DNA of 64,000 nucleotides from Podarcis erhardii (lineage: Eukaryota): assembly GCA_964252035.1 (NCBI GenBank), contig OZ176202.1; one strand, written 5' to 3'. The notes beneath the pieces are model-generated. The model was given only the letters and a program-made list of their open reading frames with translations. It had not been told where the DNA came from and ran no database searches. Made by a program: the position numbers and the translations under genes. Shown piece by piece: positions 4,268 to 64,000 of this stretch (position 1 is the first letter of the stretch; every line of letters begins with the position of its first letter).

Positions 4268-5049
4268 TATCTTTAAAACTGTTTAAATGCCAGCAAACCT
4301 TAATGAAGTAACTTATTTGTGTGATCTTTTGTACATGCCCTAGACATCCTGCCCCCGATCCTTGAAGTCTCACCTGGATCTTTCAGTCTCTGAAGGCTTC
4401 CAGATATCTTTGCATGCAATCCTTTTTATTTTCAGGTTCACTTAAGAGGGTGACCAAGGATAACCAAGTACCGGCTTATGGAACCAGGTGAGCAGATGTT
4501 CCAAAATAATTTTCGCAGTTTTGAAACCTGCTTTTTTACAGAGTGTACTAACCCTTTGCCTCCTCCAGATTTGGGTATATCTAGCCTTTCAAGTGAGGCA
4601 TTTGAATGTTTTGTTATAAATAGTTCAATAAAGTCCCACACATTCCAACAAATTGTAACAGTTGCCCTGCCAGTTGCCCTTTCCAAAGCACCTACCCGCA
4701 CCCCAGCACACTAACCCATTCCACAACTGCCATTCAGTAACAAATTCCAGTTTCAGAGAGAGAAAAGTCATTGCTAAATAAATAGCTAATTCATCTTTGT
4801 CACAAATGTGTAGGTCACCATGTGTACAGATTAGCCTATGAAGCTAATTCAAGTCAGCACCAGAACACCTAATTATCGCTACCAAAACATTATTGCCAGA
4901 ACTGTGTTAACCCTAATTTCATGTTTAAGGAGTCTTTGTATAGAAAGATGCTAGTAAGAGTATTTTAAACTTCAGTGGGTGGTTTTAACTGATCTGAAGA
5001 TAGATGTAGGTGGAATTACTATTAAGAAGGTGACATAATGTGTACAGTA

Positions 5050-5264
5050 CAGTGGTACCTCGGGTTAAGAACTTAATTCGTTCTGGAGGTCCGTTCTTAA
5101 CCTGAAACTGTTCTTAACCTGAGGTACCACTTTAGCTAATGGGGCCTCCCGCTGCCGCCGCACGATTTCTGTTCTCATCCTGAAGCAAAGTTCTTAACCT
5201 GAGGCACTATTTCTGGGTTAGCGGAGTCTGTAACCTGAAGCGTCTGTAACCCGAGGTACCACTG
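5050..5264 (+). mobile_element. Tigger-like MITE, family A
   Basis: TIRs cagtggtacctcggg / ccgaggtaccactg; TA TSD; several copies in the window. Confidence 0.92.
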
Positions 5265-5504
5265 TACTAGAATTTCTTGTTATTAGTAATTTCATTATGT
5301 AATAATTCAGTATGTACACAATTCTGCTAAGACCCACTCTGTTGATATATTCAGTTTATAGTTTGTGAGCACTGCTCTTTGTGGATGGATTAAGAAAACC
5401 AATATTCAATACTTATCGAGGGGGGGAAACAGCCGTCCCATTCACACACTTACCCAGAGTGCAGCAGCCATATCCCAAGGCTATAATTTTATGTTGCTTA
5501 TAAA

Positions 5505-5650
5505 ATCATAGAATCATAAAATTGTAGAGTTGGGAGGGACCCCAAGGGCCATCTAGTCCAACCCCCTGCCATGCAGGAATCTCAGCTAAAGCATCCATGA
5601 CAGATAGCCATCCAACCTCTGCTTAAAAATCTCCAAGGAAGGAGAGTCCA
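5505..5650 (-). mobile_element. CR1 LINE 3' fragment
   Basis: atcatagaatcata...gttgggagggacc...catctagtccaaccccctg is the CR1 3' end on the - strand. Confidence 0.75.
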
Positions 5651-5749
5651 CATGATGAGCATTTTACCAGGACAAGGGGTGACAGCTCAACCAAATAAAA
5701 AACAAAAAACACCCCACCATGTGATGTGAAATATTGCCACATATTCCTG

Positions 5750-5976
5750 AGCCAGTGTGGTGTAGTGGTTAGGGTGTTGGGTTGGGACCTAAGAGACCAG
5801 AGTTCAAATCCCCACTCAGCCATGAAGCTTGCTAGGTGACCTTGAGCCAGTCACAATCTCTTAGCATGCCCTCCCTCACAGGGTTGTTGTGAGGATAAAA
5901 TGAGGAGGGAGCAAAACCATGTATGCCACCTTGAGCTCCTTGGAGAAATGGCAGGATATAAATGTAATAATAAATA
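5750..5976 (+). mobile_element. Old tRNA-derived SINE (MIR/Squam3-like)
   Basis: gagccagtgtggtgtagtggttag head, gagttcaaatcc B box, taataataaa tail. Confidence 0.75.
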
Positions 5977-6197
5977 CAGTGGTACCTTGGGTTACATACG
6001 CTTCAGGTTACAGACTCCGCTAACCCAGAAATAGTACCTCGGGTTAAGAACTTCAGGATGAGAACAGAAATTGTGCTCTGGCAGCGCAGCGGCAGCAGGA
6101 GGCCCCATTAGCTAAAGTGGTACCTCAGGTTAAGAACAGTTTCAGGTTAAGTATGGACCTCCGGAACAAATTAAGTACTTAACCCGAGGTACCACTG
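5977..6197 (-). mobile_element. Tigger-like MITE, family A, inverted relative to 5050-5264
   Basis: Same TIRs, TA TSD, interior reverse-complementary to the 5050 copy. Confidence 0.92.
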
Positions 6198-6870
6198 TAA
6201 ATATAAATAAACAGCAGTATAGGATTAGTTCACAGGGAAGGTGGTCCTCTTCACAAAGGCCAGGAAACTCCAAAAGCAAGCCTGACCAGCACAATGTAAC
6301 AGTTGTGTCTTCATAAAGCTGGTCAATTTTCATCACTACAAAATGCAACATATTCAGATCAAATGAAATAGATATGTATCCAGAACTCCCAGTACAGGAT
6401 TTGTTTTCATCTTAATTCATGTTCATAATCACGGCTAATGCACCACTACTAGATTCTGATTTATGCTGTAAGCCGTTTAAAGTTCTGTCGCATCAATTTG
6501 GCAGCAAGCTATGTTATGTATAGGTGAAAGCAACTGTGAAAAATGGGCCTACAATGTTTTATCCTTGAAATCTAACCTTTAGGTTTTATCATTGTTGAGT
6601 GCCCCTAATGTACTGTGTAAGCTTCAGCGTGTAATTTAACGGGTGAATGGGATTTGCCCATCGCTGGAATTGGTGAAATTCCACCAATGCGTTTGAGACT
6701 GCATCACTGCTAGTCATCTGTGAATCGCTCTTTTACAGCTTTGCCCTAAAATTTGTTGTGCCAGCAAAAATGTGCTTAGAAGAACAAGGCAAACCAACTG
6801 TTGTGTCAGCACATCACTGGCCATAATATTGTGATGCTATTGGCAGATGTTCAAGTATAATTGTTGGTGG

Positions 6871-6872
<2 letters not shown>

Positions 6873-6914
<42 letters not shown>
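6873..6914. repeat. (AC)21 microsatellite
   Basis: Direct reading. Confidence 0.97.
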
Positions 6915-6917
<3 letters not shown>

Positions 6918-9465
6918 TAGTTAGCATTGGCATCTAAATGTGAGCTGGTGCTTCACCATCCACCAAATGAAAACTTTTGATTCCATCTATTTTGGGCCCT
7001 CTCAATGAAACATGGCACTGAGAGAATCCTTTGACAGGTACAGTATGTGGGTGAGGCAAGCAAAAGAAGAGCACATCTGTCTTCACTTGGTTACAATCCT
7101 GAAAGGCTTGCTAGCAGTAGGTGGGATAAAAAGGGCCGAAGAAAGCACTGCAAGGAGGGGTCTGAAGCCTTTTCCTGACTCTACATTTTGGTATTCACCC
7201 AAGCCAGAAATGAGCTATGGCTCGCAAGCTTGCTTTGGAGAGCAAGTAGTTTTGATGGAATCGCAAAACAGCACTTGTGCTATTTGAATTAGAGTGAACT
7301 ACGGGGGAAAGTGTGCATGTACATAGCTCATTCATGCAGTAGCAAACCACGGTTTAGTTTATGCCTGAACTAAACCAGAGTAGGTAAATGGTGGCGGTGG
7401 TCTTTTCGAAGCTATGAAATCTCAATTAAATTGTTTTCATATGAGGCCTGCAGTTGGCACATACTTCAGCCCCAGGCTACACATGAAAACAAAAAATAAG
7501 CTTCTCTAACACACTGGTCTTTAAATTTTGCTGATTTTGCCTGTATATTATCGATAGTTTTTTTTTCTTTATTTTTGTGTGCATGAAACCGTTGACAATT
7601 ATTCTCATTTAGTCCTAACCCTTTAAGCCAGTGGTGTGGAGCTCATAGACCTACAGATAGGCTCCATCTCCCATCAGCCCAAGCCTGCATGGCCAATGGC
7701 CAATGATGATGGGGGTTTTATTTTCCTACCCTTACGATATACTATTCACTATGTCATACTGATCCCAGATCTAGCTGTTCCTAACCTGAAGGTTTCTGAA
7801 TAAATTGCAGCTGTGGGTGACTCTGGATTCTTCCCAGCACTTCCCAACTGATTGTATCTACTGCATCACAATAGCACTTGCATCACAATGCTACGCAGAC
7901 CTTGAGTTCATGGCCTCAGGCAAGGATGCAATTTTCTTTCATCATCCTGCAGAGGTGGGTGGTTTACACCAGTGTTTTCGTTTGGATTGTTCAAGTGACC
8001 CACAGTTAAAAATTCATTTCCAAAACTATAGGGCAGAGAGGTAAGAGAGTCTATCCATACACAACCTTGTAGAATGAGGAAACATCACTTGTGTCCTGCA
8101 ACTAGACATATTATTAAATTGTATGAACTTTAGTGCTTAAGAAAAATAAAGCGATGCCAGGCTCCCAAGTCAGTCTGGAAACAGCACTTTCTGATCTAGA
8201 GATGCTGATGTGCCAGGATTCTGCACTTCCTCAGTGGTCATATAAATGTGCTCAGCTTATTCAAGGGCATTTTTTTCCTTTTCATGTATCTCATGATTAA
8301 GCCCTGGCTTTGAAAACAAGGTATCAGGGCTGAGCCCCAGTACAAATTTAATACAGATTGCCTTCATGAACAATTTAATCCCCTCCCACAAACTAAGTTG
8401 GAGAAGCTACGTCTGTATTTGTTCTTTCCAGCGGTTGCACATTAGAAGCGAATGCTGCAAAAATGGTTTTGTATCGCAGAGCCAACCTGAATTAGTTGGT
8501 TTCTGACATCCTCTTAAATTGCTTCTCTCCACACTGCAAACTCTGCCAAGAAGTGCAGCAGTGGCGCAATTTCCTTCATCTTTCATAAGTGAAACGACAC
8601 AACGTTCCTGTTCTTCGGTCACAAGAGACATGTCCGAGTGGAACAAAATTCTGCCCTGCACTCCCCCTCCTGTGAACCTTTAAAATCAGCGTGGGGAGAA
8701 GTGCAGCTGCACTAGAACTCTGCACTAGATACAACTTGATGTGATCAACTCCCCCCTCCCTGTATTTTATTCAAGTTGGTACCTTTCCTTGCACGTAAGC
8801 CAAAGTCTGTTTCTGCTCTGGAAAGGTAGGGATGGTCACATGAGAGAGGTTGTGGGGCTGCTCTGGCTATACATGATTTTAGATCCCCAGAATGCAGCCT
8901 CAATATCGCCAGATATATTTTGTCCCATGCATGTTTTTTATTGCAACAGCTTGAAATTGGAACCTTCTTTTCAAGCCAAAACTTTTTAAAATTATAGTAA
9001 CAAGATGTCATGATTTCAAGGTATCATTGAAGACTATGGGCACTGCTATTCATTACTGATATCTCAAATCAGCACTGGAAAAGGAAGCAAAAGGAAATGC
9101 AGACCATTATAAATGGATTGTTTGGTGAGCAGAGCATTAATCCGAGGTTCTGCTAATGCACACTGCAAAATCCAGAGATCTATCAAATGCTGCTTTTGAA
9201 TTCAAGCAAGCTGACTACTATGTGCAATATTTTGCCTGTGCCCTTACAAAATAGCTCACTCCAAAGACCATGAGTCATAATTGAGTCTGGCAGATAAGTG
9301 TGGTAAAAATAACTTCATTATGGAACTAATAAAAAAAAAAAATCCAAAGAAGCAGAAGACTCTGGCTGTGATAGTGAACAGAACTTTATTTAGATCAAAA
9401 GGTTAATTGGGGGGCTTATAAGAAAAGATGGCAAGCCAATGGCACAGTTCTGTGTACGGCATATA

Positions 9466-9635
9466 CCGTATTTTTCGCTCTATAACACGCACTCGACCAT
9501 AACATGCACATAGTTTTTAGAGGAGGAAAATCCGTAGGCATGCCACCCGTAGGCATTCCCCCCCATAACACACACAGACATTTCCCCTTACTTTTTAGGA
9601 GGAAAAAAGTGAGTGTTATGGTGCAAAAAATACGG
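9466..9635. mobile_element. Tc2/pogo-type MITE, short 170-bp form
   Basis: TIRs ccgtatttttcgc / gcaaaaaatacgg; TA TSD; same ends as 23774-24522 in the opposite orientation. Confidence 0.85.
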
Positions 9636-23394: not shown

Positions 23395-23492
23395 CTGGAA
23401 AATGAGGTATGATTTTATCATTTATTCTGTAAGCAACACCAACTTTAATTTCAGGAAATACATCCAAAATATCCAATTTGGTAAGAGCCAAT
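23395..23492 (-). CDS. ADSS2: ADSS2 exon 11 ([33 protein letters not shown])
   Basis: Acceptor aaaacag|A, donor G|GTGAGT; 98 nt; TKLD motif. Confidence 0.96.
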
Positions 23493-23773
23493 CTGTTTTA
23501 AAATAAAATATTGATGTGTTAGTTAGGTATAGACAAATATAAACTATAATCTTAGGAAGTAAATTTGTTTATTTTTAAAGAAAGATATAAATCACTAGGG
23601 CTGACATGGTTGCTTAGTCTTCAAAGCCACGCTTACCCATGTATATGTGACAGCCTACCTTTACATCTTGCTTTAAAATTATAGACTAAAAAAAAGTAAC
23701 CTGGGAAAACCCTGGAATTCCAGAATAAAAGCCAAAGAGAGAGAGAGAGACTATGAACATTTAACATCAGATA

Positions 23774-24522
23774 CCGTATTTTTCGCTCTATAGGACGCAC
23801 TTCTTCCCCTTCAAAAATGAAGGGGAAATGTGTGTGCGTCCTATGGAGCGAAGACGCCATAGCCCCGCGCCCCTCTTCCGGCTGGAGAGGTGACGCGCGG
23901 CTATGGCAGGTGCCCCTTTAGCCGCGCCCCCTCTCCAGCCGGGAGAGCGCGCGTGGGGCTAAAGAAGCCCCGCTTACCCTCTCCCGGCTGGAGAGGTGAC
24001 ACACGGCTATGGCAGGTGCCCCTTTAGCCGCGCGCCACCTCTCCAGCCAGGAGAGCGCGCGTGGGGCTAAAGAAGCCCCGCTTACCCTCTCCCGGCTGGA
24101 GAGGTGACACACGGCTATGGCAGGTGCCCCTTTAGCCGCGCACCACCTCTCCAGCTGGGAGAGCGCTTGCGGGGCTAAAGAGGCCATAAAAACTTTCCGC
24201 TGCTCCCCGACCTGCTCTTTGGGGCTGGTGGTGGGCTTCCCCCCGCCAGCCCCAAAGAGCAGGTCGAAAGGAACCTGAAACCTGGAGAGCGCGAGGGGTC
24301 GGTGCGCACCGACCCCTCTCCCTCTCCAGGCTTCCAAGGTAGCCGCCTGAAGGCGACTGAAAACAAGAGGGGGGAAATTCTCCCCTCTCTGCGCAGTGCC
24401 TCCTGCCGCTTCGCTAAAGGGGCGCTGGGCAGAGAGGGGGAGAATTTATTTTTCTTGTTCTCCCCCCTCTAAAACAAGGTGCGTCCTATTGTCTGGTGCA
24501 TCCTATGGTGCGAAAAGTACGG
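23774..24522. mobile_element. Tc2/pogo-type non-autonomous element (749 bp) with GC-rich multi-hairpin interior, in ADSS2 intron 10
   Basis: TIRs ccgtatttttcgc / gcgaaaagtacgg; TA TSD at 23772-23773 and 24523-24524; internal ~107-bp tandem repeat and several inverted repeats. Confidence 0.88.
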
Positions 24523-24741
24523 TAACTTTCTTCCAGAAGGGGTATCATAGTTATTAGCATGGCAGCTGGCAAGTCTTACATCAGTACTGTGACTTTAAAA
24601 ACCATTTTGTCTTCCACAGTGAGTCTTCAAAACATTGTTCTTTACTTGAAGGGTGTTAGTTTCATTCCCATTACTTCGTATTGTTTCTTCAAAGTATTAT
24701 ACTCTATTACAGTGCACTTGCTACCACTACAAACTACTCAC

Positions 24742-24866
24742 GCAGTAAATCCATTGATCATGTGAGCGTATCTAAGCAACACAAGATCCAGCCAGCCACA
24801 TCTTCTTTTCCGACCTGTGGTCACACCAACCTCTTTCCCACGTGTCTGCAGTAATTCTCCAATTTT
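24742..24866 (-). CDS. ADSS2: ADSS2 exon 10 ([41 protein letters not shown])
   Basis: Acceptor ttcttag|AA, donor GC|GTGAGT; 125 nt; aspartate-binding loop TTGRKRR. Confidence 0.96.
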
Positions 24867-35319: not shown

Positions 35320-37455
35320 CTGCAGGTAAGATAGGATTTATTATTCTTCATTTTTTCTTAAAATATTTATTAAAAGCTCACATTAGAACTATCAACCCTT
35401 TCATACATGTTGTTCCTGTCTGTTACTTGGAAGAAAAACAAATCAAGCTACTTTTTGCTTAACTTGGCAACATAAACAACAAATCTCAAACCTGTTACTA
35501 ACCGTCTTGAATGTATTGATAGTTGATTGGTCACTGATTTAAACTTGCTTCCAAGATGTATTTTCATTTACAAATACACCCACAACTTTTCAATCAAATT
35601 CACAATGCAAAAACTATTTCTAAATAAATAAATGCAAAAACTAAGCTTCACTGTGTGTCATGTGCAGTCAGTTGTTTTGACCAATGAAAGACCTCATTAC
35701 TCCTAAAGCATTCATATTTTAATAAACTGTCATAGTTGAAACACTGGTTCAGAACCAGTGTGTTATGCTAACTATATTTTTAATATATTTATATCTCATA
35801 AAATTTATATACTGCTTGATTGTAAAAAAAACCCCCAAAAACTCAAAGCGCCAAGAAAATTAAAATGAATCCACTTGAATTAACAAAACTGCCACAAAAA
35901 AAACTCACAACTTACTTCTGTAGTGTGATGTTTGATTTTGGAAGATATTCCTTGTAAAAAATATGAGAAGCCACGCCTTGGATCCATGTTTTGTGGCATG
36001 GCAGCACTGGCAAATGCTAGGTTTCTTATTTTTTTGTTCAGTCAACCAAGAGACAAATGTCACATTTTCAGGAGGATCCATTTTACTGGCTCCAACCTGT
36101 GTGTGCATGCATGTGCCAAAGAAAGTGCATGTTGGTTTTCATATTCTACTTTCTCCTTTCCTCTCTCTTACTCCTGCCTCTCTTCCCCAACTCCTGTGTC
36201 ACCCAACTTCCAGCCCCCTCCTGCTTCCTGCCAGCAATTCTACTTTCCTTTTGCAGTCTCCCATCCGGATAGTTATCCTTTCTCCCAGTTTTCTGCTCAT
36301 TTGCTCAAATTTTGTTCTGAGGTTTAAAAACCATACAGAGATGAAAGACGAAATGAAGAAGAACACTTTCCCTACTTCCTCTTCCACTGTTGTGTTGATC
36401 TAATGAACACTTGGTGCATAAGTAGGAAAGTGTGTCACTCTTCACCACTTCTTTCAGCATTATGTATTTTTCAAAGAAAAAGCACAAGCACTATCGCCAC
36501 CTCATGAAGGAGGGGGCTGCAGAGATTTTACAGGTGGTAGCTGAAGTCTTCAAAGGAGTCATTACTGAATAGGTAATTCCAGTAAAAAGCAACCAAGCTT
36601 TACCATTTTGTAACCTATTCTAATGCATAGGTAAACCAGTACAAAGATGATTATTTTAACACAGAAATACTAATAATTTGTAGCAAAGAACTGGACAACC
36701 CTATGTGTGCTTCCTAAGTCCTGGTGCTTTCAATGGGGTTTATTCACAGGTAAGTGAGCACAGAACAATAGTCACACAGTGCAATTTTAAGCATTCTTGT
36801 TTAGAAGGAATTTCATTGTGTTCAATGGAATGCTAGAGCACATAGTCCTCTTTTGTTAATTAGATAATACAGTACAATCCTAAACTCACTCAGAGTTTAG
36901 GATTGTACTCTATTATCTAATTAACAAAAGAGGACAGTGCTTTTTTAAAAAATTAAGCCAGTTTAACTGTGCTGTGTAAGAAACACACAGAATGTTCAGT
37001 GACTTTCGTGGTTGAATAGCTAGTAAAATATGCAAACACAGCATTCCAGTTATGTGAACATACTGGGCATATTTTTTCTGACAAGATTTACCTTGCGGTA
37101 ATCTACAGTGCCAATATTTATAGAGATCTAGAATGCCATTTCTGCCATGTCTTAAAAGTTCAAGAGGTTCATAAAGCATCCCATTGGCAGACTAAACCGT
37201 TAATTCACTTGCCTTGCCTATCTTATCTTTTTCATGCATCTAGAAATTTAGAATCACCTTTTAAATCACCTCATGAGAATTAGAAAGGGGTTCTATACAT
37301 GACTTCAGCAAAGAAGGGTGGTGTTCTCTACAAACTTTTATAATCCCATCCTATGTTACTTCATATTCTTAAATAAAGTCAAAAGAATAGTATGTAAATT
37401 TCAATGAGTTGTATCCATTGAAGTTGTCACACTTATGCAAGGGTTTCTGTTCGTG

Positions 37456-46000: not shown

Positions 46001-47358
46001 ATTTGTGGCAAATATATTTACACAGGATTATGCACATACTTTCTTTTTTACATCTGTATAAGAGAAGTGTCACGTGAAAAAAAGTTGGATCAGATTCTTA
46101 AAAACAACAACATGGCAGCCTTAGTTTTTTCTAAGTAGTCTAGGTATGGCAGGTCTTTTGATTTTTTCAACTCCTAAGCACAGAATTCCTACCTCATTGT
46201 TTAAGGCTGAGAAAGCACTTCCAACCTGAGCATGTTCTGAAATACACAGACTACAATTTAGAAACAAAGCACCCAAAGAATTGTGTGTGAACTTCTATGG
46301 ATTCAACAGGGCACTTTGCGTCACCACCTCTTGAGCTTCCTGCTCTTTCTCCACCCCTCCCCTGCCCTTGTGAAGACTGGAGAATCCTAAGGCTGTGTAA
46401 GAGGCTGCATTAGTAAGATGAAAACAACCCATGTTTTGTGTATGCAAAGCAGAGTTTTAGGCATGCACATGGTGCACTTTGGATCCTAGGTAGTCCTGGT
46501 TGCAATTCTGACAGAGACTGCAGGGCCATTACCTGTTCTTTGGATTATCCGTTTCCATCAAAATCACTTAATGAAAGATAATAGACGTTTTGATAAGGAT
46601 TTTTCAATTGAATTTAGGATCTTAACATTACCTGTATTATTTAAACAGCATTATCCACGTACTTGGAAGAAATTAGCTATACCAGATTGGCCATAAGAAG
46701 AGGGAGAAAATGAGAGAAGCCTGGGTCTAGGATCTCTTTCTTTAGACATCAGGTATCACACAGAAGAAAACAGGAGGACGCTTGTTTCTTATTTTGGGCA
46801 GGCAACACAACAGGAGCGGAACACCTGAGATGAACCTCTCCTCCCGCCAGTGAACTCATGATGGAGCCTCAAGGAAGACAACGGCCTCCTGGCGAAGGGG
46901 CTGGCCAAGGCCTTGCCAGCAGCTCCTTCAGCCGCCTTTTTTCCTCCGCTGCATTTCGTTCGCCTGGGCGAAGAGCTGCCGCTGCTGCACTGCAGGGCTG
47001 CCCGAGGAGAAAAAGAAGCGGACGGCGGGAAATGGCCGTAACCGTCAGAGTAGAAAGAGATAAAAGAAACACCGGGGGGGGGGGAGCGGAAGGGAAGGAA
47101 CAGGTCGCTGCCGTCCTTCCCCACCGCCGTCCGTCACAAAGCAGCGTAGTCGGCCGGGGTGGGGAGGCGGCTCGGCGGCTCCAGGCGCTCGCAAGGAAGC
47201 AGCAGCCCAGCTCAGTCGCAACAATGGAGGAAGCGGGAAGAGCCGGCTATGGGGGAAACGAAGGGGAGAGGCTCGCCCTGACGGCCAGCTGGTTAGACCA
47301 GGGCGGCGGGTAAAAAGCGCGGCGCCCGGCCTGAGCGCGGCAGTTACTATAGAAACCG

Positions 47359-47381
47359 TGGCGGCGGCGGCGGCGGCGGCG
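47359..47381. repeat. (GGC)7 tract in ADSS2 intron 1 within the CpG island
   Basis: gtggcggcggcggcggcggcggcggg. Confidence 0.9.
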
Positions 47382-47489
47382 GGAAGAGCCGCGGGGGGTC
47401 CGCTCTCGTTCTCTCTCTGCGGCCCGTCGCCTCCCCGCGCGCGCGCCTCCGCGAGAGTTCAAGGTGACTCGGCCCGCCCGGCTCCTCAC

Positions 47490-47669
47490 CTGGCACCTGC
47501 AGACGATGTCCGCGTCCTGCGCCAGCAAGTCCACCACTTTCCCTTTGCCCTCGTCGCCCCACTGTGCCCCCAGCACCACGGCCACTTTATTGCCGGGGTG
47601 CCGTGAGGCGGCCCCGCCGTTGGGGATGGTGGCGGCGGCGGCGGCGGGCGTGGAGCCGCTTTCAGACAT
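47490..47669 (-). CDS. ADSS2: ADSS2 coding exon 1 ([19 protein letters not shown]...[27 protein letters not shown])
   Basis: ATG in context ggagccATGt; GTP-binding P-loop; donor CAG|GTGAGG; 180 nt. Confidence 0.97.
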
Positions 47670-47712
47670 GGCTCCCGCAGGCGAAGGTTTCCGTATTGCT
47701 CTTAAGGCACAT
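47662..47712 (-). promoter_or_regulatory. Overlapping uORF ([16 protein letters not shown], stop) in the ADSS2 leader
   Basis: ATG 43 nt upstream of and out of frame with the main ATG; its TGA lies inside the ADSS2 CDS; weak Kozak context (cgcATGt). Depends on TSS position. Confidence 0.45.
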
Positions 47713-47924
47713 GCGAGGAGCAGAGGAGGAAGCGGCGCGCCCGACTCCGCCGGCGACGGCTACCTCATCCCCGCCTTCCCTCCCAGTTGCCGCATCCCGC
47801 TCCGGCTCCTGCTGCCGCCTACCGGCCTCCCTTTGGCATCCCGCTCCGGCGCGTGTCAGGAGGCCCGCCCCTTCATCTGCATAATATGTTAAATGCCGGC
47901 GCTTCGTGCCCATATATAGAAGGA

Positions 47925-47937
47925 ACTACGCTGCCCA
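47925..47937 (+). promoter_or_regulatory. ZNF143/SBS-type motif ACTACGCTGCCCA
   Basis: Exact fit to the ACTAYRNNNCCCR consensus, between the divergent genes. Confidence 0.55.
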
Positions 47938-48153
47938 TAGTGTCGCGCGGCTAACTTCGCAGTCTCGCCGTGAAATGGCCGCGGGTCATGCTGGGAAACG
48001 CAGTCGCTCCGGCTCTCGCCTCAGCTGGCGGGACGGCGCGCTGCTCGCTCGCCCCACTGTGGCCATCCGCGCTGTTCTTAGTAGACGCAGAGCGAGCGCG
48101 AGGCAGCGTCGGTTGCTAACGGCGGTTTGGGGGCCGTTCTTTCGGCAGCGCTG

Positions 48154-48236
48154 ATGGCGCGCTTTTTGTCCCCGCTTGTGTGGGCCAAGCCCCTGCTGCT
48201 CTGCCTCTGGTTGAAGGGATGCTGGGCAGTGTGGAG
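48154..48236 (+). CDS. CATSPERE: CATSPERE exon 1, signal peptide (MARFLSPLVWAKPLLLCLWLKGCWAVW)
   Basis: Hydrophobic leader like recalled human LLLWLSCYGSALWR; donor AG|GTGCGG; 83 nt. The ORF track start at 48127 is a TTG, not an ATG. Confidence 0.85.
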
Positions 48237-48457
48237 GTGCGGGAGAGAAGGATGGCCCGGGGGGCTGAACGGGTTGGGAAGGGGATGTCAGAGAGGCAGG
48301 TTCAAGGGTGCGAGAGGGGAAACGAGGAAGTGGGAGTGTCCATGGCTCAGGGTAGCGAGCGGCCCTCATGGTGAGTGCAGGTTGCATCTTGTGAAGAGAA
48401 AAGTAACAGATATGAGGAGGTAGAGCACTCCTCTAGCCGGCCACCCAGGGGCCGTTA

Positions 48458-48690
48458 CAGTGGTACTTCGGGTTAAGTACTTAATTCGTTCCGGAGGTCC
48501 GTTCTTAACCTGAAACTGTTCTTAACCTGAAGCACCACTTTAGCTAATGGGGCCTCCCGCGCCACCGGAGCACGATTTCTGTTCTCATCCTGAAGCAAAG
48601 TTCTTAACCTGAGGTAATATTTATGGGTTAGCGGAGTCTGTAACCTGAAGCATATGTAACCTGAAGTGTATGTAACCCGAGGTACCACTG
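48458..48690 (+). mobile_element. Tigger-like MITE family A at the edge of the CpG island (CATSPERE intron 1)
   Basis: Both TIRs and TA TSD present. Confidence 0.92.
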
Positions 48691-49207
48691 TACTTCGGTT
48701 TGCTCACTCTTCTCAGTCCAAGAGCCACATTTGGAATCCCCTCCGAGGGTTGCATGCCAGTGGTGGGCATAGTGAAAGTGAGCACAGCCAGTGCGCCCAC
48801 TCTCCGACATGGAAGGCGGCTGACAAATTAGGCGAAGGGAAGGTCGTCTGGCAAACACACTCCCAGGACATCCCTGGGACTGCTTTATCCTGTGAGATCA
48901 GCAGAGAGACCTTCAAATATTTTCTGCTTCTCTTGGTTTATTCAATCCATACCTGAGCAGGGGAAACAGGCCAAAAAATCCAACAGATACCAACAGATAA
49001 AGCAGACAGCTGGATACAGTAATTCTTTAAGGAAGCAATGAATATCTACTGGTAATTGATCAGACCAGGGTTCCTCAAGGAAGCCAAGATATTTAAATCA
49101 CAAACTGCATGTATAGTATAGAGGTGTGTGTGTGCTCATTAACATCGAAAAACTATGAAGAGTTTTGCCTTTGTTAATGAGCACCTTGTTTTTTACTGTC
49201 TTTTCAG

Positions 49208-49887: not shown

Positions 49888-50036
49888 GCTGGGATTAGCT
49901 CAGTTGGTAGAGCATGAGACTGTTGATCTCAGGGTTGTGGGTTCAAGCCCCACATTAGGCAAAATATTGCTGCATTCCAGGGGGTTGGATTAGATGAGCC
50001 TTGTGGTCCCTTCCAACTCTACATTCTATAATTCTA
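49888..50036 (+). mobile_element. tRNA-Lys-derived SINE with CR1-like tail
   Basis: Head tagctcagttggtagagcatgagact...gggttcaagccccac; tail ggggttggattagatgagcc...cccttccaactctac. Confidence 0.85.
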
Positions 50037-53835: not shown

Positions 53836-53883
53836 GTAAGTTGTGAATAGTTTCTGTTTAGTTCCTGAATTACTACTGTGGTA

Positions 53884-54092
53884 CAGTGGTACCTCGGGTT
53901 AAGAACTTAATTTGTTCTGGAGGTCCGTTCTTAACCTGAAACTGTTCTTAACCTGAGGTACCACTTTAGCTAATGGGGCCTCCCACTGCTGCTGCACCGC
54001 CAGAGCACAATTTCTGTTCTCATTCTGAAGCAAAGTTCTTAACCCAAGGTACTATTTCTGGGTTAGTGGAGTCTAACCTGAAGCGTCTGTAA
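53884..54092 (+). mobile_element. Tigger-like MITE family A, right TIR missing
   Basis: ta|cagtggtacctcgggttaag...; stops at cgtctgtaac. Confidence 0.85.
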
Positions 54093-59876: not shown

Positions 59877-60569
59877 TAAACAATCGTTTTAATTAAATAT
59901 TTTCTTGAATTACAAAAGTACATACAGTGTCTCAGTTTTCCGTTCATAGCATTTTTTCAATAGATCAGTTATATTCGATGTGAGGCACTAACATTATAGT
60001 TACAGGTAGGTAGCCATGTTGGTCTGCCATAGTGTAAACAAAATAAAAAAATTCCTTCCAGTAGCACCTTAGAGATTAACTAAGTTTGTTATTGATATGA
60101 GCTTTCGTGTGCATGCTTCTTCTGAAGAAGTACGCATGCACACGAAAGCTCATACCAATAACTAATGTTATAGGCAGTATAAGTTTGGGGAAGTTCACAT
60201 CCTCAGATCCCCACTGTGGGTTGCAGTGAGAGCATCATCCTTCCGAAGATCCGCTTTGGGGCGGGGTCAGTTTACGTCTCTTTCCTAGGCACCACCCTTT
60301 ATTTATTTATTTATTTTTCAAATGGGTGGGGGTGAGACACAGAATGAGAGGGGTATCTCCTACCCTTTTCACAGGGCTAGCTCTGGGCCAGTGTGTGGCT
60401 GAGCCTTTTCTGTGCTTTGCAGTCCCTCCTCTTGCCTCTCTCCTTTTCCCTTCCTTCGAGGGTTAGATCAGCCTTCTCCCGTTTTGTACCCTTGGGTCCT
60501 GGGGTTCATCAGGCGATCTGGGAGAGATTCTGAGGGTGCTCTCCTTAGTTCGCCATCTTGGTGGAAGCC
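59877..60569 (-). mobile_element. Second short L1-ended non-autonomous retroelement (about 0.7 kb)
   Basis: Minus-strand 5' end GGCTTCCACCAAGATGGCGAAC; ATTAAA and A-rich 3' end; at least 9-bp TSD ttgtctttt (59868-59876, 60575-60583). Confidence 0.65.
60001..60170. mobile_element. Penelope-like terminal fragment forming a fold-back
   Basis: gtagccatgttggtctgccatag...ttccagtagcaccttagag; inverted arms at 60087-60116 and 60134-60163. Confidence 0.65.
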
Positions 60570-61010: not shown

Positions 61011-62870
61011 TTATTGTGGGTATAATGTGTATTTATTTCTTAAATTTCTATACTGCTGTTCATCTGAGGATCACGGGGCAGTTTACAATACAAAAACAGA
61101 AATATATGATGGTTGCAGGGTCCAGATCAGTTTATATGGGGAGAGGCAGTCCTTAAGGTATTGCAGTCCTCAGCCATTTAAGGATTTTTAGGTCAAAAGT
61201 AGCACTTTGCATTAGGAAACTAATTGGGAGCCAGTTCAGTCAGGCCAGGATTGGATTTATACACTCAAGGCAGCCTCACATAGAACTTGTTGCAGTAATC
61301 TAACCTAGAGATATACGTGGCCCAGTATAGCAAGGGAAATCCATATAGACATATCTGATGCACCCCCTAATGAGAATGTATATTGTAATGCATATGTATT
61401 CTTAACATGAGGAAAAGTCACTTGAGTGATGATGTGGAAGAAGATTAAATCTTCTTCTCCTGATTGCACTCCTAAAAGCAGTTTCTCCTGATCTTAGTTA
61501 TCAAGCTAAGCATTACCTGCATTTCTGTGGAACAAATATTTGGGCCTCATGCACATTCCCATTAGTTCCAGGAAGCAAAACATGCCTAGAGCCTTGATCT
61601 TAATCTTATAAGCACTTTCAAAAATCTTTTTTAAAGAGGTATATGTAAAAAATACATAAATTGCAATCCAAACTCTGACTCCACCAGGCTGGAGGAAGGT
61701 GAGAATTTAGCACAACCCCTTAGTCCCCCAAAGAAGGGGAAGCCAAGGTGAGAGAAGTCCATCTTCCACCAGCAAGCAGCTTGGTGGGCAGAACTCACAT
61801 GCACTGCTGATCCTCCTGGCGTAACAGTAAAAAGGAGGGTGTGCTATGGAGCAGTTTCCTAGGCACCATTTCTTTTTTTTCTTTTTCTTTTTTTAAATAT
61901 TTTTTATTAAGGATTTTCTTGTTTTACAGCAGCCATGCCTTCACAGCCAGGTGGACTGCTCTTGAGATGAGCCCAATTATCAGTAAGCACAACACAGGCC
62001 AGATATAAAGCCTGCATGAGCCACCCACGATTATATGGCACCTCTTATGGTGTGGGACAAAACAATATGTGAACTGAAACACAGTCACCCTTCAAAATTC
62101 ACACTTACTGTACAGTTTTTGAAATTTGGTATGCAGATCTCCAACAAAACAGTGTTTACAAAATGCATATATTAGGAGAAAGTGGACATAAAAATGAATA
62201 TAGTTATGAAAATGAAATACAAAAATGCATTGTATTAAGATAAATTGCAACAATGTGTGTATTAGTCAAAACTGCACACAAAAATGTGTTTAGTAGGAGA
62301 AATTAAAACTAAAATGCCATGAATTTTCATGATTATTTTGAAAAAGAAAATTCACAAATTGCTGCAGAAATATGGAGAACCTAAGACTGGAAAAATGAGA
62401 ATCTGAAAGAACTGAAATTGACAGTTCTTTCATTCCTAGTTTTGAGCTTGCTGAGACTGTTTTCAGCATTCCTAAAGAGCTCGTTGTTGCGTACAGGACT
62501 ATTTTTTATTTTATTTTATGAGTGGAGTTTCAGATTCTGCCTGCCATCTGCATGAGTTATGTCATTCACTCAATACACAGATTTTTGAGCAAATGAGATA
62601 GCTCAAGAAATGGAGTCTCCTTCCAAACTCTAGTATATTATCTGTCAATGTTTGTAGCTTGGTGCATATGAATAGTTTCACAATAGCTGTATTCTACATG
62701 CATTGATAATACAAATTTTTGAACTGCTGCTTTTCTAATGGTGACATACACTGCAATCCTATAAGATAACGTGGAATTATGTTACATAGATCCTAATAGA
62801 AATTTCCATTTAACATGCTTGGATTTAGGGTAATAAAGTGTAATCATATGATGCTTTTTTCTATTTTTAG

Positions 62871-63360
62871 ATACTGGGAAATTGACGTGCCTAGCATTTC
62901 AGATTACATCATTGGAGTAGTCAGTGGAAAACCAGTTACTTTTCAGGGTTGTTTTGTTGCCCGGACTCCTTTTATCATGGCAAAATCAGAAATTCCTCCA
63001 GTCAACGTACATGATGTCTCTATCTCGACTCCAGCTGGTACTGAGCTCATGATAGCATGGTCTGCATGTCATACAACTAAAGCAGTTGTGGTGACAAATT
63101 ATGGAGCTTTCCTAACACATGATGAGTTCAGACATACAAAAAGAATCACATTTCCCTCCACTGTATTAGATCCAGCTGTAGCTCAGAAAGTAAATGATGT
63201 AGCCATAGTACAGGTACACATTGTATTTTTAATAGACAGTTCTGCTTATTTTATAAACAATGACAAGATGTTCAGAGTTGGAAAACAACAAAAACTTCCA
63301 GAAAGAGGAATTCTTGGGATAAAAGAAAGAATCTGGTGTCTAAGGAACTATCCAGTTCAA
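62871..63360 (+). CDS. CATSPERE: CATSPERE exon 9 (YWEIDVPSISDYIIGVVSGKPVTFQGCF...ERIWCLRNYPVQ); gene continues beyond the window
   Basis: Acceptor ttctatttttag|A, donor CAA|GTGAGT; open 490 nt; VTFQ.CF, LM..W.AC and VFLI....Y motifs match recalled CatSper epsilon. Confidence 0.93.
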
Positions 63361-64000
63361 GTGAGTTATTCAAAATATTTTATATTTTAGAGGGTTCATA
63401 TGGACTTATTTTTTATTCATACCACCACAACTTAAAAAACATTGCAGCCTGTTGCTGCCCAGAGCTTCCGGGATGCGGTAGTTTAGCACTGTAAAGCATA
63501 TCCTCTTGGTTGACAGGTAGCACACTCAGAAAGCACTGGCTGCAAGGGAAAGGGCTTTCCTTCAGTTCCCAGACTCGATCTGTCTGGTTAGTAGGTTAGC
63601 AGCCACAAAATAGCATTCAACAGCAACTGAACTTAATGAATGTCAAGAAAAGGGGAATAATGTGACCAGGAGCCAAATGGCAGCAGTCCGCTGAAGCCAT
63701 TCAAGTATGACTTCCCTCCTCCTGACCAAGAGCTGAGGCACATAGCTGAGACAGGCCAAACAGCTTTAGGGAAATGACTTGGACAGTTTATGTGCAAAGT
63801 TTTCCCTGCAGTTTCAAAAGGTTTCCTCTCCTTCAAGATTTTTGAGAAAACTCCTCATTATGGGATTTTTTATATGCCTACCACTTGCCAAGTTTGTGCA
63901 GCATCACCCTACTTCCCTACAAATGGCCATTCTCATCAAGCACACACACCATTCTCATGGTGATGCAAGAAGCATCCAAAATGCAACTTTTCTATAACGT

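What the first reader, a model, noticed from the sequence alone, without database searches (positions are those of the whole stretch)
23774..24522. Pogo/Tc2-type element whose whole interior is a chain of about 9 GC-rich hairpins, inside ADSS2 intron 10
Seen: between ordinary CCGTATTTTTCGC TIRs with a TA TSD, nearly all sequence folds back locally. There are six alternating hairpins (23856-24181), a perfect 21-bp stem (24208-24266), a perfect 26-bp palindrome gaggggtcggtgc|gcaccgacccctc (24293-24318) inside cctggagag/ctctccagg arms, and an 18/19-bp stem (24375-24447). A 170-bp element with the same ends at 9466-9635 lacks all of this. Abundant CpG implies a recent insertion. Inference: a fold-back cargo module that makes highly structured RNA in a housekeeping pre-mRNA, could extrude cruciforms, and may be an undescribed family architecture.
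Basis: partly seen in the sequence, partly recalled or inferred. Interest (0 to 1): 0.7.

Follow-up and report, generated by a model that had tools for sequence, protein, structure and literature searches.

The report
Hairpin-packed jumping-DNA relic in ADSS2 intron
A 749-letter non-coding cut-and-paste transposon, whose interior is a chain of GC-rich hairpins built mostly by repeated copying of one 54-letter palindromic piece, landed recently in an intron of the housekeeping gene ADSS2 in a lizard; it is a well-structured example of a known kind of repeat-carrying mini-transposon rather than a new kind of element.

Summary
Window 23774-24522 is a discrete insertion with TA flanks and 27-nt imperfect inverted ends. 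About 73% of its bases pair locally, in 11 hairpins. Folding is about 20-24 sd more stable than dinucleotide shuffles, on both strands, as RNA or as DNA.

The "six alternating hairpins" are one 54-nt quasi-palindromic arm present six times in alternating orientation. That makes a 108-bp unit repeated 2.9 times.

Contigs from public runs show the site filled in two closely related organisms (A and B) and empty in a third (D, about 1.3% flank divergence). So the insertion is young.

Contig depth is only a rough index. The element's ends run about 40,000 and 5,000 times single-copy depth, the central palindrome a few thousand times, and the array only about 50-100 times, with shorter array variants among copies. 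The interior is therefore a mosaic of the family's own palindromic modules, not captured gene sequence.

Where this copy's stems mismatch, the family-majority letter usually restores the pair. This copy is decaying.

No Rfam family, protein relative or expression evidence points to a host function. Tandem-repeat-carrying MITEs are already described. The pogo/Tc2 assignment and the absence of a catalogued consensus could not be tested. This scan has noted similar hairpin arrays in other MITEs of this genome.

The parts
23772..23773 (.). TA, left copy of the target-site duplication
   Evidence: Sequence. In organism D one contig joins 23723 to 24523 with only 40 letters between.
23774..23800 (+). 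Left terminal inverted repeat, 27 nt
   Evidence: It matches the reverse complement of 24496-24522 at 22 of 27 positions.
23774..23855 (.). Left terminal fold-back module: TIR, a 10-11-bp hairpin, and an inverted copy of the subterminal motif. It is the most abundant part of the family.
   Evidence: Inverted pair I17. Fold -47.7 kcal/mol, z -10.5. Summed contig depth about 3.4 million against about 80 in the flanks. 75% identical to the right end of the short element.
23834..23846 (+). One of four copies of a 13-nt subterminal motif, a putative transposase-binding site. The others are at 23788-23800 (-), 24479-24491 (+) and 24496-24508 (+).
   Evidence: 8 matches in the window, all inside the two elements, four in each, in mirrored orientation (2.07 expected by chance). 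That the motif binds transposase is inference.
23856..24185 (.). Array of six 54-nt quasi-palindromic arms in alternating orientation, equal to a 108-bp higher-order unit x 2.9. Symmetry axes lie at 23910, 23963, 24017, 24071 and 24125.
   Evidence: TRF, repeats, axis scan, arm alignment A1. Hairpin folds -57 to -85 kcal/mol, z -7.8 to -13.
24208..24266 (.). Hairpin with a perfect 21-bp stem
   Evidence: -55.6 kcal/mol, z -11.
24277..24334 (.). 58-nt palindrome with no spacer: a 26-nt perfect core in this copy, fully paired with the family-majority letters
   Evidence: The majority letters at 24280, 24292 and 24321 restore pairs. Depth is about 280,000-435,000.
24366..24466 (.). Nested hairpin with an 18/19 stem
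   Evidence: z -6.3.
24496..24522 (-). Right terminal inverted repeat
24523..24524 (.). TA, right copy of the target-site duplication
9466..9635 (.). 170-bp relative with the same ends and the same four subterminal motifs, in opposite orientation and without the GC-rich modules
24742..24866 (-). Upstream ADSS2 exon. Its 5' splice site GTGAGT starts at 24741, 219 nt from the element.
   Evidence: tblastn with E. coli PurA; sequence.
23395..23492 (-). Downstream ADSS2 exon. The 3' splice site is 281 nt from the element.

Best explanation
This is a young, non-autonomous cut-and-paste DNA transposon of MITE type. It has a TA target duplication, 27-nt imperfect TIRs and four subterminal 13-nt motifs. 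It belongs to a very abundant family of this lizard lineage. Its interior is a mosaic of the family's own GC-rich palindromic modules. The largest block arose when one 54-nt quasi-palindromic arm was amplified to six alternately inverted copies. The likely route is fold-back priming or slippage at hairpins during replication or gap repair in source copies (inferred). The element inserted into an ADSS2 intron after organism D split off and before organisms A and B split. It most likely sits there as a neutral passenger that is spliced out with the intron. Its hairpins are a DNA-level by-product that decays after insertion, not a host function.
For: It is a discrete insertion. The junction contigs match exactly in organism A and with few differences in B, while one contig in organism D bridges the site with 40 letters in place of 799. 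Flank divergence is about 1.3% for D and about 0.6% for B. The TIRs, TA flanks and motif arrangement are shared with the short element. The array is a tandem repeat of one arm, and units 2 and 3 are 98% identical. Summed contig depths differ about 1000-fold between modules. Many contigs leave this copy after 23852 and after 24334. Joints that skip part or all of the array, such as 23909 to 24193 in all three organisms, show that arm number varies among copies. A single-copy contig in organism B carries the same junction between the left end and the first arm at another locus (record 10). All three units of this copy share letters that differ from the family majority (23911/24017/24125 and 23915/24021/24129), which indicates local amplification or homogenisation. 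At 9 stem positions where this copy mismatches, the majority letter restores the pair, against 1 position the other way. There is no coding or known-RNA signal: no Rfam family at gathering score and no protein relatives of two of the interior ORFs. Published models derive internal tandem repeats of MITEs from their stem-loops (PMC3879986, PMC12628747).
Against: No other full copy could be read, so the family structure is inferred from aggregated contig tables, and the tool warns that summed depth is not a copy number. The interior of this locus is not bridged by one independent contig, so the unit count of 2.9 rests on the assembly. There is no RNA run for the organisms that carry the insertion, so neutrality is assumed and not shown.
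Confidence: 0.72

Rival explanations
1. The hairpin modules are kept by selection at the level of the transposon. For example, they might bring the two ends of a long element together, or mimic a structure used in transposition, so that copies with good palindromes are the ones that spread.
For: Family-majority letters give more perfect palindromes than this copy. The same design is noted in other MITEs of this genome. The left end is itself a fold-back.
Against: A majority that pairs better than a single copy is also expected from neutral decay of copies of a palindromic master. The array-bearing form is about 100-1000 times rarer than the ends, and the short 170-bp relative lacks the modules. 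No compensatory changes could be scored here.
Confidence: 0.1
2. The element acts on the host. When transcribed in the ADSS2 pre-mRNA, its 21-31-bp stems would feed ADAR, Drosha or Dicer, or disturb splicing of the neighbouring exons. Alternatively it acts as a small-RNA source.
For: The minus-strand (gene-sense) RNA is the more stable one, because G-U pairs turn CpG-decay sites into continuous stems of up to 31 bp. The element makes up 60% of a 1249-nt intron. The hairpins are of pre-miRNA size and give many sub-threshold miRNA-model matches.
Against: The best Rfam match is 37 bits against a cut-off of 64, which is generic hairpin scoring. The site is empty in a close relative, so there is no conserved role. 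The element lies more than 200 nt from both splice sites. RNA reads from organism D on the array are near zero, and reads on the ends continue into unlike sequence, meaning they come from other copies.
Confidence: 0.08
3. It is a nested composite. A separate mobile unit carrying the array inserted into, or recombined with, an ordinary short member of the family.
For: There are sharp breakpoints where most family copies diverge, after 23852 and after 24334, and module abundances are unequal. An earlier follow-up in this scan (s1-220638) found a hairpin array carried as a piece of one element inside another.
Against: No inverted ends or duplicated target flank the array block. The junction between the left end and the first arm recurs at another locus (record 10). 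The arms share short motifs with the abundant central palindrome (D4 and D5).
Confidence: 0.08
4. The number or arrangement of the hairpin units is an assembly artefact.
For: No single independent contig spans the interior. Units 2 and 3 are 98% identical, a level at which assemblies can miscount.
Against: Both junctions are confirmed without differences. Array-like contigs exist in three organisms from different studies.
Confidence: 0.02

Closest known systems
Tandem-repeat-containing MITEs (DTC84 of the clam Donax trunculus, pearl/CvA elements; PMC3879986)
   Same: A short non-coding element with end 'cassettes' bearing inverted repeats. It has a central array of up to about five repeats whose number varies among copies, and palindromes inside the repeats are proposed as hotspots for length change.
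   Different: Those elements have an AA duplication, an adjoining microsatellite and about 160-bp direct repeats, and may be Helitron-related. This one has a TA duplication, no internal microsatellite, and a unit made of two inverted 54-nt arms.
Xenopus MITEs with riding tandem repeats (Xstir; the Tc1/mariner MITE miDNA4), as summarised in PMC12628747
   Same: A vertebrate MITE, Tc1/mariner-type for miDNA4, whose interior holds from one to many copies of a repeat. The proposed origin is through stem-loops or microhomology during replication or repair.
   Different: There is no sequence relation. No expansion into a free satellite was seen here. The alternating-orientation design is not stated for those elements in the text read.
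Foldback-type elements (Drosophila FB; Galileo, PMC4168063)
   Same: Extensive intra-strand pairing, and tandem subrepeats within a DNA transposon.
   Different: In foldback elements the subrepeats build long terminal inverted repeats. Here the TIRs are 27 nt and the array is internal and local.
MADE1 / mir-548-type MITE hairpins (from general knowledge, not tested here)
   Same: A TA-flanked palindromic MITE whose transcript folds into hairpins of pre-miRNA size.
   Different: No small-RNA evidence, no Rfam membership, and several unrelated hairpins rather than one element-wide hairpin.

Membership tests
Tc1/mariner-pogo (ITm) superfamily, non-autonomous member (MITE) | TA target-site duplication | tested here: met
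   TA on both sides of both elements. The empty site in organism D is consistent with one TA, though its letters were not seen.
Tc1/mariner-pogo (ITm) superfamily, non-autonomous member (MITE) | Terminal inverted repeats, small size, no coding capacity, high copy number | tested here: met
   The TIRs match at 22 of 27 positions. The element is 749 bp. Its ORFs are repetitive, and the two searched have no relatives. More than 100 distinct contig variants cover the ends in each run.
pogo/Tc2/Tigger group specifically | Ends matching an autonomous element that encodes a pogo-type DDE transposase with a CENP-B-like DNA-binding domain | not testable with these tools
   No transposase ORF in the window. 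No Dfam/Repbase library and no host genome to search. Metagenome and viral scans for the TIR gave nothing.
Tandem-repeat-containing MITEs | Central tandem array between TIR-bearing flanks, with copy number varying among copies | tested here: met
   108 bp x 2.9. Contig joints skip part or all of the array in three organisms.
pearl / DINE-1-like lineage of repeat-containing elements | AA duplication and a tetranucleotide microsatellite next to the array (PMC3879986) | tested here: not met
   The duplication is TA, and no microsatellite lies inside the element.
Foldback elements | Long terminal inverted repeats built of subrepeats | tested here: not met
   The TIRs are 27 nt. The array lies on one side of the interior and pairs locally.
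Known microRNA or other Rfam RNA families | Score at or above the family's gathering threshold | tested here: not met
   The best match is 37 bits against 64 (MIR3627). All 56 matches are sub-threshold.
Pack-type gene-fragment capture | Interior derived from a host gene | tested here: inconclusive
   No protein relatives of two interior ORFs, no RNA family, and the modules are themselves multi-copy. The host genome could not be searched for a single-copy source.

The most novel reading that the evidence does not exclude
In this lizard lineage, MITE families of unrelated superfamilies repeatedly build and carry arrays of alternately inverted GC-rich hairpins. That would point to a lineage-specific DNA process, such as fold-back synthesis at palindromes during gap repair, or to element-level selection that keeps the stems paired. 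This element would be one instance of a genome-wide phenomenon not yet described for reptiles.
Probability: 0.2. Interest if true: 0.55.

Novelty: new member of a known kind. Interest (0 to 1): 0.3.

Why it matters
By itself this is an ordinary young transposon insertion in an intron. Its value is as a clean, dated example: the site is filled in two congeners and empty in a third. It shows how one palindromic piece inside a MITE grows into a higher-order array of hairpins and then decays. It is also a presence/absence marker for these lizards. If the recurrence of such arrays across unrelated MITE families of this genome is real, it would bear on how minisatellites and satellites are seeded by transposons in vertebrates.

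Tried and rejected
Several routes to other copies of the family gave nothing.
- Exact TIR-pattern scans of metagenome and viral contigs found nothing.
- Protein-word searches with the array ORF and with the ORF over the right half of the central palindrome and the nested hairpin (24302-24469) found nothing. ORF-based retrieval of paralogous copies was therefore not possible, and no covariation test or RNA model was built.
- Look-ups of this scan's notes by sequence returned nothing.

Literature searches also came up empty on the specific points.
- Searching papers for the TIR letters returned only unrelated primers.
- No paper on lacertid MITEs was found in the library. A Zootoca paper describes a different Tc1/mariner fragment.

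Three readings were rejected.
- A miRNA-cluster reading: all Rfam matches are generic and below threshold.
- A captured-gene reading: the modules are multi-copy.
- A foldback-element reading: the TIRs are short.

Exon counting with E. coli PurA could not find the less conserved exons, so 'intron 10' is unverified. Exons were searched one by one by reference.

No N stretches occur in the window.

Full report
**What is there**

Window 23774-24522 is bounded by TA on both sides. Its ends are imperfect 27-nt inverted repeats that begin CCGTATTTTTCGC. That 13-mer, allowing two mismatches, occurs four times in the 64 kb. All four are ends of this element or of the 170-bp element at 9466-9635; 0.69 matches are expected by chance.

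A 13-nt subterminal motif has eight matches in the window. All eight lie in these two elements, four in each, in mirrored orientation. The two elements are therefore relatives lying in opposite orientation. Self-comparison confirms this: only the terminal 70-80 nt are shared, at 75-93% identity, and the interior has no second copy in the window.

**Is the folding more than chance?**

Yes.
- The whole element folds at -502 kcal/mol on the + strand and -522 kcal/mol on the - strand as RNA. Shuffles give about -312 and -322 with sd about 8.6, so z is -22 and -23.
- As DNA, z is -22.6.
- With base pairs limited to a 130-nt span and 100 dinucleotide shuffles, z is -20 and -24. In that fold 73-74% of bases are paired and there are 11 hairpin loops.
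- No other 749-nt tile of the window comes close. The next is the CpG-rich region around the first ADSS2 exon.
- Each module folded alone has z between -6 and -13.
- Ten of the 25 longest close inverted repeats of the window lie in this element.

**Anatomy**

1. *Left end, 23774-23855.* This is itself a fold-back: TIR, a 10-11-bp hairpin, then an inverted copy of the subterminal motif.
2. *Array, 23856-24185.* This is not six unrelated hairpins but a tandem array. TRF finds a 108-bp unit x 2.9 with 93% matches. Symmetry axes recur every 54 nt. When every second 54-nt arm is reverse-complemented, all six arms align as one sequence, and each arm is itself nearly palindromic around a CGGCT centre (alignment A1). 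Any arm can therefore pair with either neighbour. Units 2 and 3 are 98% identical.
3. *24208-24266.* A hairpin with a perfect 21-bp stem.
4. *24277-24334.* A spacer-less 58-nt palindrome with three mismatches.
5. *24366-24466.* A nested hairpin, followed by the right end with two direct motif copies.

The central palindrome shares short stretches with the array arms (families D4 and D5).

**Gene context**

tblastn with E. coli PurA, taken from an annotated record, places adenylosuccinate synthetase exons on the minus strand from 47594 down to 22067. One exon scores 68 bits to human isozyme 2 (2v40) against 44 bits to isozyme 1. An ORF at 62815-63387 carries a CATSPERE domain. From general knowledge, CATSPERE is a neighbour of ADSS2 in mammals.

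The flanking exons are 24866-24742 and 23492-23395. The intron is 1249 nt and the element fills 60% of it, 219 nt from the 5' splice site and 281 nt from the 3' splice site. The pre-mRNA carries the minus-strand version. In that version, sites of CpG decay become G-U pairs, giving uninterrupted stems of up to 31 bp. I did not verify that this is intron number 10.

**Evidence from public runs**

*Presence and absence.*
- In organism A, probably the source species, contigs run from each flank into the element ends without a single difference.
- Organism B also has the filled site.
- In organism D, one 2085-nt contig covers 23400-23723 and 24523-24900 with only 40 letters between. This is an empty site. 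The small length difference fits the adjoining AG microsatellite.
- Flank differences are about 9 in 702 for D and about 5 in 812 for B.

The insertion therefore postdates the split from D and predates the A/B split. A precise loss in D cannot be excluded.

*Module abundance.* Summed contig depth is a rough index only, and the tool warns that it is not a copy number. In run X1, where the flanks have a depth of about 80:

| Part of the element | Summed contig depth |
|---|---|
| Left end | about 3.4 million |
| Right end | about 450,000 |
| Central palindrome | 280,000-435,000 |
| 21-bp stem hairpin | about 65,000 |
| Array | 4,500-9,000 |

*Variation among copies.*
- Many contigs diverge from this copy just after 23852 and after 24334.
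- Joints link 23852 to 24301.
- Joints link 23909 to 24193 through a few other letters, and this form occurs in all three organisms. So forms without the array, or with one arm only, exist.
- A single-copy contig of organism B carries the junction between the left end and the first arm at another locus, at 89% identity.

The interior is thus a mosaic of family modules, and the six-arm form is a rare, expanded variant.

**Decay, not maintenance, at this locus**

All three units of this copy share letters that differ from nearly all other array contigs, at homologous positions 23911/24017/24125 and 23915/24021/24129. This indicates amplification or homogenisation within this sublineage.

I mapped the listed variant positions onto the symmetry axes. 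At nine stem positions this copy has a mismatch and the family-majority letter restores the pair. Only one position goes the other way. With the majority letters, the central palindrome pairs at all 58 positions. This is what neutral decay of a copy of a palindromic master predicts, and it does not by itself show selection.

**Function**

- No Rfam family reaches its threshold. The 56 sub-threshold matches, nearly all to miRNA precursor models, are generic hairpin scores, best 37 bits against 64.
- Two of the interior ORFs were searched and have no relatives.
- The only RNA runs available are from organism D, which lacks this insertion. Reads there pile on the family ends, and 96% of what was laid continues into unlike sequence, so they come from other copies. 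The array is almost unread.

I therefore rate the element as a neutral intronic passenger. The routes by which the palindromes arise are inferred from published models for MITE-internal repeats (PMC3879986; PMC12628747, citing Izsvak 1999, Hikosaka and Kawahara 2004, and Scalvenzi and Pollet 2014). These routes are fold-back priming, slippage at stem-loops, and abortive gap repair.

**Comparison and novelty**

MITEs that carry short internal tandem arrays with palindromes are a described kind. This element meets that description, but not the defining AA duplication and microsatellite of the pearl/DINE-1 lineage. It also lacks the long TIRs of foldback elements.

Superfamily placement rests on the TA duplication. 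The pogo/Tc2 label is untested because no autonomous partner or repeat library was available.

Earlier notes of this scan call the genome a wall lizard. They list several other MITEs with alternating GC-rich hairpin arrays. I could not compare their sequences. They make a unique architecture less likely and a genome-wide habit more likely.

**Verdict**

This is a new member of a known kind, of modest interest.

Noticed in passing
window 62815-63387 (+): A 191-aa ORF with a CATSPERE beta-propeller domain (E 2e-24). It is probably an exon of the neighbouring gene, which supports the ADSS2 locus identity by synteny.
   Followed up: partly
window 49894-49955 (+): An Rfam tRNA match (51 bits) that ARAGORN does not call. 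It may be a tRNA-derived SINE fragment rather than a gene.
   Followed up: partly
window 5048-5134 and 53882-53968: Two copies of an 87-bp hairpin element with identical 25-nt arms starting TACAGTGGTACCTCGG. This is another small palindromic MITE family.
   Followed up: no
window 36845-36935: An AT-rich near-perfect palindrome: 43-nt arms, 98% complementary, with a 5-nt loop.
   Followed up: no
window 60085-60165: An inverted repeat with 32-nt arms, 94% complementary, and a 17-nt spacer.
   Followed up: no
window 23736-23750: An (AG)7.5 microsatellite 22 nt (23751-23772) from the insertion. The bridging contig of organism D is about 8 nt shorter than expected here, which suggests length variation between species.
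   Followed up: partly
window 46400-48700: The second most fold-stable and GC-rich part of the window, around the first ADSS2 exon (47594-47469, minus strand). It is presumably the promoter CpG island.
   Followed up: no
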